DNA from: Pocillopora damicornis
Lineage: Eukaryota
Reading direction: 5' to 3'
NCBI RefSeq assembly: GCF_003704095.1
Contig: NW_020844967.1
Coordinates: 1-64,000 of the forward strand
DNA: 64,000 nucleotides
Part shown: in pieces, positions 59,167 through 62,100 of the stretch
How the letters are laid out: each line of letters opens with the position of its first letter
Position numbering within the stretch: the first letter of the stretch is position 1
Notes under the pieces: generated by a model
Databases searched by the model: none
Told to the model about the DNA's origin: nothing
The model's input: the letters and a program-made list of their open reading frames with translations, nothing else
Translations under genes and position numbers: made by a program

Positions 59167-62100
59167 TTACATAGTCAGTTCCTGAAAAAAAGAAAAAAAA
59201 AAACCATGTTATTAGCAAAGTGACCCCAAAGGTTTGCATGTTGTTAAGACAGCTGTGTATGATGGAAGCTGAGATAAACGAGATGAAACAGTTTTGAATA
59301 CCCTCCTGACAAGATGCTGGTTTAAAAAAAAAAAAAAAAGGAAACGAACAGGAAAATAATGAACCAAAAAAATCCCCATTCCAGGCATCTATGACCTTAG
59401 GATGGACATTTGAATGATATTGCCATTCTTCAGCTGACACCCGAAAGGAATAAATTTTCTTACCAATCTACAACATGATACACCAAGGAAGAAACTTACC
59501 ATAATGGCATTGACGATATCATTTTCGTTATTTTTCAACGCTTTGATAGCCTATAAAAAGGATTTGGAAGGGAGAACACATTAATTTTCAGTTTGAGTAC
59601 ATAAAAAACCTCTTTCATCATGATCTAAAGGCAACAGATTTTTTTCTTCTTGTATGGCCCAAACAGCCCTGCAAGCACTAAAAAACCTAACATTATACAG
59701 TACACTACACTAGGGCGGTAAAGGATGATGTGAGCAGAGGCAGAAAAAGCTGTTCGACCTCAGGGGATGCAAGTTGAAAGATGAAAGAAAGAAAGAGAAA
59801 TAGTGGTGGTTAGAAGATGAAATGCTCATTGACTGAGTTAAGTTGTACTGGACAGGAAAACATTTGGCTTGAGGTCATGACTAATTACTCTCCCAATCAG
59901 TCAATTAAAGAATATTTAGCCTATCATATGTATTTTGCAATCACAAGGACATAATTATGTAAAAGACAAAACTCAATTTAGAATTTCATAAGGTAAATTT
60001 TTTTTTGGAAAAAACACAAGAAAAAAAAAAAAGAGGAAAGCAACAGCAACATAAGCATACAAACCACAACAATTGGTATTGGATATCTGGAACTAATTAG
60101 TACCATACCTTAGATTTGGAGACGTTAGCTTGCTGCATAACAATTTCAACATCTTTTTCCTCCACATTGCTATCATTGATCTGCAATTGACAGAGGTTCA
60201 ATATAAGTGAAAATGCAGGAAGTTCATATTTTCATCTCCAGCAATGAAAAGACACCAGTAACAAAAAAATTTTTCTCATATAAAAAAAGTCAGGGAAATT
60301 TTGCTCTGTGAAGATGTAAAAAAGGGAAAAGGAGTTTTTTTTCCTTTCAGATGGTACTGCCATGGTGAAAATTTTAAAATTGTGATACTGTTGCAAAGGC
60401 TCCATCAACCCCCAAGGAAACAGGAGTTGGCAATTAGAAGCTTAATGAAGAAAATTTCTACATACCTCTTCTTCCTCAGATTCTTCTTCCTGTTCCATGG
60501 CAGCTGCCTTTGCTTCTGGGATGGCAGGGGCTGGTTGAGGAGCTTTGAATTTCTCAGCGGCCTACAATAATTGAAAGCATGAAAACACAAAATCACATCT
60601 GATCAAACACTAGCTCATATGAACAAAGGTGTAAAGGATTAAGAAAACAGTTCCAGAAAGAATTCATTCCCTAGAAACCAATGATCACTGTAAATTGTCA
60701 TGAAAATATTCTGGATAGTTGGTTGTCTTAACTAACACATGGAAAGTACCAATCCAAAGAGTTTAAAGAGGGCAAAGATAGATCTCATAAATGTGTAAGT
60801 AAAGTTCACCTTTATTTCCATTCATAGTATATAACAAAAGAATTTGTAATCACTAGGATTATAAATAAAGGTGTCACCTGAACTTGGGCTTGCTGGCTCA
60901 AATCCTCAATCTAAAGAGAAATTGGAATGTGTGTTAGATACAAACAGTGAAAAATGAAAATGGTAATAAAGACACACACAGAATGTAGAAGTGTGCCCTC
61001 AGATCTCATAATCTTTAGATCAGTGGACCACATCTAACCAAACCTTCCAGCCAAGTGTATGGGTGTAACACAACACAAATGAAGTAATGTATGCAAGTTT
61101 ACACAAAATCAAAACAATACAAACATAAGGAAAGAGGCTTTTAAGTTTGGCAGATTTTCCTCACCATAAGGCATCTTTATCGTCACTGGGCACAAATGGA
61201 CAAAAACATAGCACTTACGTTTCAAAGGGTACTAATTTGACTGATGCTACACAACATCAAGATGGATGAATTGTACTCTATGTAAATACATGTAGGTGTT
61301 TCCTCACAAAAAAATTTGAAAATAATTTTTTCCATGACAGCTGTTTTCTTTTGTTTTCCAGAATGAATTTCCTTTGTTTTTGTCCAAACAAATTACTCAA
61401 TTCACCAGCTTTCCAGCCATGAAAAAACTGAGTTATTGTCACGAGCTAACCTGAAATAAGCACAAATCAAAATGTTTCCTTGCAAACACTCTAAAGTGCA
61501 AGCACATTGTAAAATGTAAGATAAAATTACCTGGACAAAATAGAAACTTATAGAACACATACCTTTGCCTCACCAAACACTATGTATGTATCCGAGGCTG
61601 GGCTTTTGTAAACATCTGGCTTGTTTATAACAAATAGTATATTTTTGGATTTCCGTATTGTTACTCTGGTCACTCCAGAAACAGTTTTGAGTCCAATTTT
61701 TGACAGAGATTTTCTGGCTTTCTTTTCTCCTCTGCTCTGTTTTGCTTTGCTGACAGGTTCCTCAGTCAATCCAGCTGCGGCAGCCACTTCACTTGAAATA
61801 GCTGGTTGGCCAGCATCTCCTTCCTCGAGCTCTGGTAATTCGTCATCACTGTCACTTTCAGTTCCCGAAATAACTGGAATGTTAAACAATTGATATTATA
61901 TAATAAGCTCAGTTATGCACGCATTCTGATTGGTTCTCACTTATGATCTATTAGAGGATAGACATATAAATGATGTCATCATTAAAACTTTTTTTAATTC
62001 TTTATTATATAAAACAAATAGATTCCCAGTAATAGATCACAGAGGACGTCAAATGTGGTAAGAACATCAGTGACACACTCAGCTGTGCCTCATGTGCCAC

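What the first reader, a model, noticed from the sequence alone, without database searches (positions are those of the whole stretch)
60992..61194. Unannotated tRNA-targeting box C/D RNA in a NACA intron: predicted guide for 2'-O-methylation of tRNA-Met wobble C34
Seen: a ~203-nt minus-strand unit with a perfect 7-bp terminal stem, C box GTGACGA and D box CTGA. An 11-nt element next to the D box reads tctCATaatct on the plus strand, i.e. the elongator tRNA-Met anticodon arm. Counting 5 nt from the D box lands on 61007, the C of CAT (C34). Established: human SNORD97 (EIF4G2 intron) and SNORD133/SCARNA97 (LARP4 intron) guide Cm34 of tRNA-Met, a rare eukaryotic case of snoRNP-guided tRNA methylation that protects against stress-induced cleavage. 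Inference: this system is present in a cnidarian, predates the bilaterian split, and sits in a different host gene (NACA, TOP-type). It may be relevant to stress tRNA fragmentation.
Basis: partly seen in the sequence, partly recalled or inferred. Interest (0 to 1): 0.85.

Follow-up and report, generated by a model that had tools for sequence, protein, structure and literature searches.

The report
Coral SNORD97-type tRNA-Met guide RNA
An intron of the coral NACA gene holds a conserved small RNA of the known SNORD97/SCARNA97 family, built to direct methylation of the first anticodon base of methionine tRNA; it is real, but it is an expected new member of a family already reported from insects to plants.

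Summary
On the minus strand, 60992-61194 has a 7-bp terminal stem, C box GUGACGA, D box CUGA and a 12-nt guide. G61007, the fifth base upstream of D, faces C34 of elongator tRNA-Met.

Rfam's SNORD97 model matches it end to end. The score is 30.4 bits, below the 45-bit cut-off because the middle is twice as long.

- **Host:** RNA contigs confirm the splice joints of a highly expressed NACA gene, so the unit is intronic and in sense.
- **Conservation:** in five other unnamed taxa the unit is the only non-exonic block conserved in NACA. Compensatory changes occur in the terminal stem, in the C-box/D-box G-C pair and in an internal helix.
- **Target:** the coral's own seven elongator tRNA-Met genes match the guide. 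All carry a 12-13-nt intron at 37/38.
- **Copy number:** one copy in the assembly.

A stable RNA and Cm34 itself were not tested, because only polyA contigs were available.

Novelty is low. Vitali and Kiss (2019) already reported single SNORD97/SCARNA97 candidates in insects, Ciona and plants. New here are the cnidarian member, the recurrent NACA host, an expanded structured middle, a second conserved 5' element, and the intron-bearing target genes.

The parts
60992..61194 (-). Whole box C/D RNA unit (about 201-203 nt)
   Evidence: The blastn block against orthologue L089 ends exactly at 61194 and 60992.
61188..61194 (-). 5' strand of the terminal stem (UGUGCCC)
   Evidence: Compensatory changes in L093 and L092.
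61180..61186 (-). C box GUGACGA (consensus RUGAUGA, C at position 5)
   Evidence: The orthologues read AUGACGA, GUGAUGA or AUGAUUA. Position 6 covaries with D-box position 1: G-C here, U-A in L093 and in the Rfam consensus.
61165..61179 (-). Second conserved element (UAAAGAUGCCUUAUG), a possible D' guide
   Evidence: From AAGAUGCC onward it is identical in the window, L089, L090 and L091; the first few bases vary in L091. No target was found.
61161..61164 (-). Putative degenerate D' box GUGA
   Evidence: Aligned NUGAGG in six of seven copies. Inferred, not tested.
61144..61155 (-). 5' strand of the internal helix that closes the D'/C' region
   Evidence: RNAalifold on four taxa, coordinates. 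92% of cells are paired against 20-49% in slid controls, and 7 pairs change on both sides.
61032..61044 (-). 3' strand of the internal helix
61018..61024 (-). C' box (ACUGAUC; AAUGAUC in the orthologues)
   Evidence: UGA is invariant in all seven copies.
61003..61014 (-). D-box guide AGAUUAUGAGAU; G61007 faces C34
   Evidence: GAUUAUGAGA is invariant in seven copies and identical to the Rfam SNORD97 consensus. It pairs with G30-U41 of the coral tRNA-Met: 11 Watson-Crick pairs plus one G-U. No variant in four RNA runs.
60999..61002 (-). D box CUGA
   Evidence: The orthologues read CUGA, CCGA or AUGA.
60992..60998 (-). 3' strand of the terminal stem (GGGCACA)
   Evidence: The variant G>A on the plus strand at 60995 in run X15 turns a G-C pair into G-U.
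60911..61562 (-). Host intron of NACA (652 nt, GT..AG)
   Evidence: Splice joint 60910|61563 in contigs of four RNA runs. The 3' end of the unit lies about 81 nt upstream of the 3' splice site.
61563..61875 (-). NACA exon encoding the NAC domain (upstream exon)
   Evidence: Pfam PF01849 on all homologues, 88% identical to Oculina patagonica NACA. Exon contigs are at high depth.
60877..60910 (-). NACA micro-exon ([11 protein letters not shown]), downstream exon
   Evidence: Joints 60910|61563 and 60560|60877.

Best explanation
The unit is an intron-encoded box C/D guide RNA, the coral orthologue of the SNORD97/SCARNA97 family.

Inferred pathway: it is transcribed as part of the abundant NACA pre-mRNA and released from the spliced intron. 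It is trimmed back to the terminal stem and the C/D kink-turn, where the box C/D core proteins, including the methyltransferase fibrillarin, assemble.

Its 12-nt element upstream of the D box pairs with positions 30-41 of elongator tRNA-Met(CAU). The wobble cytidine C34 then sits opposite the fifth guide base and receives a 2'-O-methyl group.

Shown here: the sequence anatomy, the host intron and its splicing, conservation with compensatory changes, and the match to the coral's own tRNA-Met genes.

Inferred from the human family: accumulation as a stable RNP, the methylation itself, and any protective effect on the tRNA.
For: 1. **Anatomy.** 7-bp stem, C box, C' box, 12-nt guide and D box.
2. 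**Family match.** Rfam SNORD97 matches over model positions 1-142 at 30.4 bits, E 0.0044 in 801 nt. The 13-nt guide and the stem letters UGCCC/GGGCA are identical to the consensus. The orthologue L090 scores 32.8 bits.
3. **Intron placement.** Splice joints in four RNA runs place the unit in a sense intron of a highly expressed NACA gene.
4. **Conservation.** The unit is present in NACA introns of five other taxa whose exon proteins are 89-67% identical. Across the whole gene only the exons and the unit give blastn matches, and the match edges coincide with the unit.
5. **Covariation.**
   - Terminal stem GUGCCC/GGGCAC becomes GUGCUC/GAGCAC in L093 and CUGUCC/GGACAG in L092.
   - C-box position 6 and D-box position 1 change together, G-C to U-A.
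   - The internal helix is 92% paired with 7 double changes, against 20-49% and 0-4 in slid registers.
6. **Shallow variation.** Three variant sites in the 202-nt unit against 26 in 450 nt of flanking intron, Fisher p = 0.013, and none in the guide.
7. **Target.** Seven full elongator tRNA-Met genes carry GUCUCAUAAUCU across the anticodon loop after splicing.
8. **Precedent.** The identical guide was shown experimentally to direct Cm34 in human cells (PMC6601510).
Against: - **Below the Rfam cut-off.** The score is 30.4 against the curated 45 bits.
- **No test of a stable RNA.** All available RNA runs are polyA or cDNA contigs. They cover the intron only as low-depth unspliced contigs, depth 7.5-56 against roughly 1,500-12,000 on most of the neighbouring exons.
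- **Box deviations.** C at position 5 of the C box here, and CCGA as D box in L091.
- **Size.** At about 200 nt the RNA is long for a box C/D snoRNA.
- **Distance to the 3' splice site.** It is 81 nt here but 171-563 nt in the orthologues.
- **Unexplained element.** A second element conserved among the coral-like taxa has no assigned function, so the tRNA may not be the only target.
- **Not universal.** One further taxon (L103) has no unit in its NACA gene.
- **Unnamed orthologues.** The orthologous contigs carry no organism names.
Confidence: 0.82

Rival explanations
1. It is a genuine box C/D RNA, but its main or additional job in corals is something other than tRNA-Met C34. One option is methylation of an rRNA or snRNA site through the second conserved element (UAAAGAUGCCUUAUG upstream of GUGA). 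Another is a non-guide, chaperone-like role.
For: The 5' element is as conserved as the tRNA guide in the four coral-like taxa, and it is followed by an NUGA motif that could be a D' box. Such strict conservation is hard to explain by kink-turn formation alone.
Against: - No multi-copy or stable-RNA target turned up. The 13-nt complement has only 4 other exact hits in the genome. Hits with up to 1 mismatch number 299 against 209 in the control, and none lies in a recognised RNA gene.
- The element is not conserved in L092 or L093, nor in the Rfam consensus.
- The D guide is invariant everywhere and has a proven target in humans.
Confidence: 0.1
2. It is a conserved intronic DNA or pre-mRNA element that regulates NACA, for example in splicing or transcription, and is not released as a guide RNA.
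For: Only unspliced-intron contigs cover it in the RNA data. It sits in a highly expressed housekeeping gene.
Against: - Conservation follows RNA base-pairing through compensatory changes, not primary sequence.
- The conserved blocks are exactly the box C/D motifs and a guide identical to a proven human guide.
- In L093 the unit sits in different NACA introns and in two copies, which fits a mobile snoRNA gene rather than a position-bound regulatory site.
Confidence: 0.04
3. It is a chance co-occurrence of short motifs in an intron.
For: Guide plus D box alone occurs about as often as the reversed control, 2 against 2 per genome. The Rfam score is below the cut-off, and the single-sequence fold is not unusually stable, z = -0.96.
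Against: The same composite unit recurs in six further copies from five taxa, inside the same gene, with diverged surroundings.
Confidence: 0.01

Closest known systems
Human SNORD97 (Rfam RF01291; intron 13 of EIF4G2)
   Same: Box C/D architecture, an identical guide AAGAUUAUGAGAU, the same terminal stem letters (UGCCC/GGGCA), a sense-intron location and the same predicted target C34 of elongator tRNA-Met (PMC6601510).
   Different: - **Length:** 142 nt in human against about 202 nt here, with 125 nt rather than 61 nt between the conserved ends.
- **Boxes:** human has C box AUGAUUA with D box AUGA; the coral has GUGACGA with CUGA.
- **Host gene:** EIF4G2 in human, NACA here.
- **Rfam score:** below the family cut-off.
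Human SCARNA97 / SNORD133 (intron 10 of LARP4)
   Same: The same D-box guide and target. Similar overall size, 216 nt against about 202 nt, with a long internal region (PMC6601510).
   Different: SCARNA97's internal 93 nt are pyrimidine-dense, cannot form Watson-Crick structure, and act as a Cajal-body signal. The coral's internal 136 nt are only 58% pyrimidine and contain a covarying helix. Localisation is unknown here.
Single 'common SNORD97/SCARNA97' candidates in insects, Ciona and flowering plants (Vitali and Kiss 2019, Suppl. Fig. S3C)
   Same: One copy per genome with the invariant D guide, matching the stated pre-vertebrate condition.
   Different: No cnidarian is named in that paper's text. 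Its sequences and host genes are not in the held text, because the figures are images, so host-gene identity could not be compared.
Haloferax volcanii box C/D sRNA guiding Cm34 of elongator pre-tRNA-Met (Joardar et al. 2011, as cited in PMC6601510)
   Same: A trans-acting box C/D guide for the same nucleotide of the same tRNA. Going by that paper's title, the substrate is a precursor tRNA. In the coral every elongator tRNA-Met gene is intron-bearing.
   Different: An archaeal sRNP, not intron-encoded, with no sequence homology shown. The paper could not be read here.

Membership tests
Box C/D guide RNAs (general) | C box (RUGAUGA) near the 5' end and D box (CUGA) near the 3' end, brought together by a terminal stem | tested here: met
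   GUGACGA (one deviation), CUGA and a 7-bp stem. The stem and the C6-D1 pair covary across taxa.
Box C/D guide RNAs (general) | Antisense element of at least 10 nt directly upstream of D, with the target nucleotide opposite the fifth base | tested here: met
   12 pairs with tRNA-Met positions 30-41, with G61007 opposite C34.
Box C/D guide RNAs (general) | Stable RNA bound by fibrillarin, NOP56, NOP58 and SNU13 | not testable with these tools
   Only polyA or cDNA contigs were available. They show unspliced intron at low depth and cannot show a discrete RNA.
SNORD97/SCARNA97 (RF01291) | Score at or above Rfam's gathering threshold of 45 bits | tested here: not met
   30.4 bits, E 0.0044 in 801 nt and 0.025 in 4.5 kb. 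The alignment is full length and loses score in the doubled internal region. No hit at the gathering threshold.
SNORD97/SCARNA97 (RF01291) | Phylogenetically invariant D-box guide complementary to the elongator tRNA-Met anticodon arm | tested here: met
   AAGAUUAUGAGAU is identical to the model consensus. GAUUAUGAGA is invariant in seven copies.
SNORD97/SCARNA97 (RF01291) | Encoded in sense in an intron of a protein-coding host gene | tested here: met
   NACA intron 60911-61562 on the minus strand, with joints seen in four RNA runs.
SNORD97/SCARNA97 (RF01291) | Cm34 present on elongator tRNA-Met and dependent on the RNA | not testable with these tools
   No modification data. The target sequence is present in all seven gene copies.
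SCARNA97 subtype | Pyrimidine-dense, unstructured internal region acting as a Cajal-body signal | tested here: not met
   The internal 136 nt are 58% pyrimidine, 53-62% across copies, and form a covarying helix. Localisation itself was not tested.

The most novel reading that the evidence does not exclude
In this coral the guide may act on the intron-containing precursor of elongator tRNA-Met, as the Haloferax paper's title indicates for that archaeon.

- Every elongator tRNA-Met gene found carries a 12-13-nt intron at 37/38: seven full-length genes, plus one 5'-truncated copy and one SINE-like sequence with the same arm. No intronless copy exists in the assembly.
- In six of the eight tRNA-gene copies, one of them the 5'-truncated copy, the intron starts with AUCU or GUCU. 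That repeats the first bases of the 3' exon, so the full 12-bp duplex with the guide can also form before splicing, in half of them with one extra G-U pair.

If so, an intron-bearing tRNA-Met plus a trans box C/D guide for C34 would be an ancestral arrangement kept in cnidarians, and perhaps in plants. NACA would be an old, recurrent host of the guide.
Probability: 0.2. Interest if true: 0.6.

Novelty: new member of a known kind. Interest (0 to 1): 0.4.

Why it matters
It adds a non-bilaterian animal to the few eukaryotes in which a snoRNP-type guide for a tRNA is documented.

- **Age of the family:** the guide, the terminal stem and even the paired C/D-box positions have been held nearly unchanged between a coral and human.
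- **Host gene:** NACA, a very highly expressed gene for a ribosome-associated chaperone of nascent polypeptides, is a recurrent host in several taxa.
- **Practical use:** it gives a probe and a target site for asking whether Cm34 limits stress-induced tRNA-Met cleavage in corals.

The intron-bearing tRNA-Met genes also make the order of methylation and splicing directly testable. None of this changes the established picture of the family.

Tried and rejected
- **Rfam at gathering threshold:** nothing on the whole window.
- **Whole-genome scan with RF01291:** gave only weak unrelated hits of 27 bits or less and did not score the window's own copy, because only 47 of about 66,000 candidates were scored. 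The one other hit (L094) has no C box or stem.
- **First tRNA-Met searches failed.**
  - The bare 11-mer hits were not tRNA genes.
  - An intronless anticodon-arm pattern found none.
  - A pattern including the T-loop found only tRNA-derived SINE-like sequences.
  - The genes were found once the tRNA cluster on contig C1122 was noticed.
- **Target of the 5' conserved element:** not found. A four-copy near-match on C172 lies beside masked N stretches and is no known RNA. The N stretches were left as they are.
- **rDNA:** only fragmentary in the assembly, so rRNA targets could not be screened.
- **Stable RNA:** not testable from polyA contigs.
- **Orthologues in named bilaterians:**
  - Oculina and Argopecten proteins were not on record.
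  - Three ENA places had no DNA.
  - The tick contig ends 580 nt after the exon.
- **Taxon assignment:** placing L091-L093 by NAC-exon identity was inconclusive, 71-76% to both coral and mollusc.
- **SNORD110-like hit at 61934-61987:** weak and not conserved.
- **Joined NACA protein:** not built. Only the single exon ORF was searched, by reference.
- **Covariation counts:** made in a script rather than with the count of structure pairs, to avoid typing a long structure string.
- **Joardar 2011:** not held.
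Full report
**1. Observation**

Read on the minus strand, window 61194-60992 has this layout:

| Element | Sequence | Coordinates |
|---|---|---|
| 5' terminal stem | UGUGCCC | 61194-61188 |
| unpaired base | A | 61187 |
| C box | GUGACGA | 61186-61180 |
| internal region | long | between the boxes |
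| C' box | ACUGAUC | 61024-61018 |
| spacer | UAA | 61017-61015 |
| guide | AGAUUAUGAGAU | 61014-61003 |
| D box | CUGA | 61002-60999 |
| 3' terminal stem | GGGCACA | 60998-60992 |

- The two ends form a perfect 7-bp stem.
- The fifth base upstream of the D box is G61007. On the plus strand this is the C of CAT inside TCTCATAATCT (61004-61014).
- One detail differs. The inner CUGA is part of the C' box, as the alignment with the orthologues shows, not a D' box.

**2. Is it more than chance?**

Alone, it is not.
- Guide plus D box occurs twice in the 234-Mb genome, against two hits for the reversed control.
- The single-sequence fold is unremarkable, z = -0.96.
- Rfam finds nothing at its gathering thresholds.

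With permissive thresholds the only family that matches is SNORD97 (RF01291).
- The match is full length, model positions 1-142, at 30.4 bits, E 0.0044 in 801 nt and 0.025 in 4.5 kb.
- The two ends align almost letter for letter. The stem letters UGCCC/GGGCA and the 13-nt AAGAUUAUGAGAU are identical to the consensus.
- The score is lost in the middle, which is 125 nt here against 61 nt in the model.

**3. Host gene**

The surrounding minus-strand exons encode a NACA protein.
- The exon ORF window:61548-61889 finds 2,053 homologues, all with the NAC domain PF01849. The best named one is Oculina patagonica NACA at 88%.
- I searched this single exon by reference and did not join exons into a spliced model.
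- Contigs of four RNA runs from four studies carry the joints 60910|61563 and 60560|60877. Their loose ends match the neighbouring exons.
- The intron is therefore 60911-61562 (652 nt, GT..AG). The unit lies in it in sense orientation, and its 3' end is 81 nt from the 3' splice site.
- Most exon contigs have depths in the thousands. The intron is covered only by one unspliced contig per run, at depth 7.5-56.
- These are polyA or cDNA libraries kept as contigs, so they cannot show or exclude a discrete excised RNA.

The organism is a coral.
- Some runs are labelled coral metagenome.
- The assembly, 234,350,878 bp in 4,393 contigs, matches the 234-Mbp Pocillopora damicornis assembly quoted in PMC9646523.
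- The species name is my inference.

**4. Conservation**

From the exon search I fetched contigs that carry NACA orthologues, all unnamed ENA long-read metagenome assemblies.

| Locus | Exon protein identity | Unit |
|---|---|---|
| L089 | 89% | same intron, 4698-4899 |
| L090 | 83% | same intron, 4609-4822 |
| L091 | 74% | same intron, 4800-4977 |
| L092 | 67% | same intron, 5344-5489 |
| L093 | 72% | two copies in the next two introns, 5547-5723 and 6382-6564 |
| L103 | 68% | none |

(for the contigs; for the units.)

- blastn of the whole coral gene against these loci gives matches only to exons and to the unit. Against L089 the match is 78.6% over window 61194-60992, exactly the unit and as conserved as the coding exons.
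- Against the more distant taxa only the two ends survive.
- In alignment A1 the invariant blocks are UGA of the C box, UGA of the C' box, GAUUAUGAGA, and GA of the D box with the stem.

**5. Evidence that the conserved thing is an RNA structure**

- **Terminal stem.** GUGCCC/GGGCAC becomes GUGCUC/GAGCAC in both L093 copies and CUGUCC/GGACAG in L092. These are three double changes at three different pairs.
- **C/D kink-turn pair.** C-box position 6 and D-box position 1 pair in the kink-turn (established knowledge of box C/D structure). They read G and C in the coral-like taxa and L092, but U and A in L093 and in the Rfam consensus.
- **Internal helix.** RNAalifold on the four closest taxa predicts a helix, 61155-61144 with 61032-61044 plus flanking pairs. 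It closes the region between the putative D' and the C' box.
  - In my count 92% of cells are standard pairs and 7 of 19 pairs change on both sides.
  - With the 3' partner slid by 1-3 columns the figures are 20-49% and 0-4.
  - The structure was predicted from these same sequences, so this control is lenient.
- **Shallow divergence.** The four RNA runs differ from the window at 3 sites in the 202-nt unit, none in the guide, and one of them turns G-C into G-U in the stem. In the remaining 450 nt of the intron there are 26 variant sites, Fisher p = 0.013.

**6. The target in this genome**

- An intronless elongator tRNA-Met anticodon arm is absent from the assembly.
- The genes sit mainly in a tRNA cluster on contig C1122, with one more on C3794.
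- Seven full-length copies exist. ARAGORN calls five of them tRNA-Met(CAT), and Rfam tRNA scores two at 52-54 bits.
- All have a 12-13-nt intervening sequence after A37, and each is followed by a T run.
- After splicing the arm reads GUCAGUCUCAUAAUCUGAAGG, the same as in the vertebrate, insect and plant genes listed in the supplement of PMC6601510.
- The guide pairs with G30 (G-U) and U31-U41, 12 pairs, with C34 opposite G61007.
- In six of the eight tRNA-gene copies, one of them a 5'-truncated copy, the intron begins AUCU or GUCU. The same duplex could then form on the precursor, in half of them with one extra G-U pair. These copies are tandem paralogues, so this is weak evidence.

**7. Copy number**

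The 22-nt guide, D box and stem, searched with up to three mismatches, occur once in the assembly. The looser motif has one other hit without boxes or stem. This fits the single pre-vertebrate gene described in the literature.

**8. What is known**

Vitali and Kiss (PMC6601510) established the following.
- Human SNORD97 (142 nt by the Rfam model length, nucleolar, EIF4G2 intron) and SCARNA97/SNORD133 (216 nt, Cajal body, LARP4 intron) together direct Cm34 of elongator tRNA-Met. This methylation protects the tRNA from angiogenin cleavage.
- By BLAST they found both genes in all vertebrates examined.

The deep age of the system is therefore published. A cnidarian member is expected, although none is named in that text. 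The held text gives no host genes for the invertebrate candidates, so I cannot say whether NACA hosting was seen before. A text search for NACA as a snoRNA host found nothing relevant.

**9. What is particular here**

- **Host gene.** NACA hosts the unit in five of the six unnamed taxa that could be read. The two most distant ones cannot be assigned to a phylum.
- **Size.** The RNA is SCARNA97-sized, but its middle is not pyrimidine-dense, at 58%, and it is structured. It therefore does not meet the SCARNA97-specific feature. Localisation is open.
- **Second element.** UAAAGAUGCCUUAUG followed by GUGAGG is, apart from its first few bases in L091, identical in the four coral-like taxa. This is the arrangement of a D' guide.
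  - No target was found in the assembly.
  - The rDNA is too fragmentary to screen.
  - Masked N stretches were left untouched.
- **Possible extra pairing.** GUGAGGA in that region is complementary to UCCUCAC of the tRNA-Met T arm. This is my reading of the sequences. I treat it as an unexplained coincidence.
- **Target genes.** All are intron-bearing.

**10. Verdict**

This is a real, conserved, intron-encoded box C/D RNA. It is the coral member of the SNORD97/SCARNA97 family, and its most likely function is to guide Cm34 of elongator tRNA-Met, confidence about 0.8. The RNA's accumulation, its proteins, the modification and any stress role are inferred.

It is a new member of a known kind, and interest is moderate at 0.4.

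Noticed in passing
G000:C1122:405060-414550 (L086, L088, L098-L101) and G000:C3794:323115-323255 (L102): All seven full-length elongator tRNA-Met(CAT) genes of this coral carry a 12-13-nt intron at the canonical 37/38 position. The introns read ATCTAATTAGGT, ATCTAATTAGAT, GTCTAATTAGAT (twice), GTCTAATTAGCT, ATACGATTTAGAA and ATCCTATGCGAT. No intronless copy exists in the assembly. From memory, plant elongator tRNA-Met genes also all carry introns.
   Followed up: partly
L087 (G000:C1122:412230-412350): A 5'-truncated tRNA-Met pseudogene copy inside the same tRNA cluster. It keeps the intron and the 3' half.
   Followed up: no
L093:5547-5723 and L093:6382-6564: One unnamed taxon has two SNORD97-like copies in two successive NACA introns, both with C box AUGAUUA and D box AUGA as in human SNORD97. 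The second copy has a very U/G-rich middle. This is an independent duplication of the guide gene.
   Followed up: partly
L103:6001-10500: A further NACA orthologue, 68% exon identity, has no SNORD97-like unit in its introns. NACA hosting is therefore frequent but not universal.
   Followed up: partly
window 61934-61987 (-): A weak SNORD110-like box C/D match, 22.2 bits, E 0.46, in the preceding NACA intron about 60 nt upstream of the exon. It is not conserved in the five orthologous loci, so it is probably chance or lineage-specific.
   Followed up: partly
window about 62025-62145 (-): A long imperfect inverted repeat in NACA intron 2; arms include AAAUGUGGUAAGAACA and UGUUCUUACCACAUUU. It looks like a foldback or MITE-like insertion or a hairpin RNA.
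   Followed up: no
L059:1470-1545, L064, L065: tRNA-derived SINE-like sequences with a CTCATAA anticodon-loop remnant and a T-arm. ARAGORN does not call them as tRNAs.
   Followed up: no
window 61158-61164 (-) versus tRNA-Met T arm (L086): GUGAGGA, next to the putative D' box, is complementary to UCCUCAC of the elongator tRNA-Met T arm. It could be extra guide-target pairing or coincidence.
   Followed up: no
G000:C172:43946-54290 (L096, L097): Four copies of CAAAAGGCATCTT within 10 kb, next to stretches that read N (masked or gaps). There was no Rfam match, and the N stretches were left as they are.
   Followed up: partly
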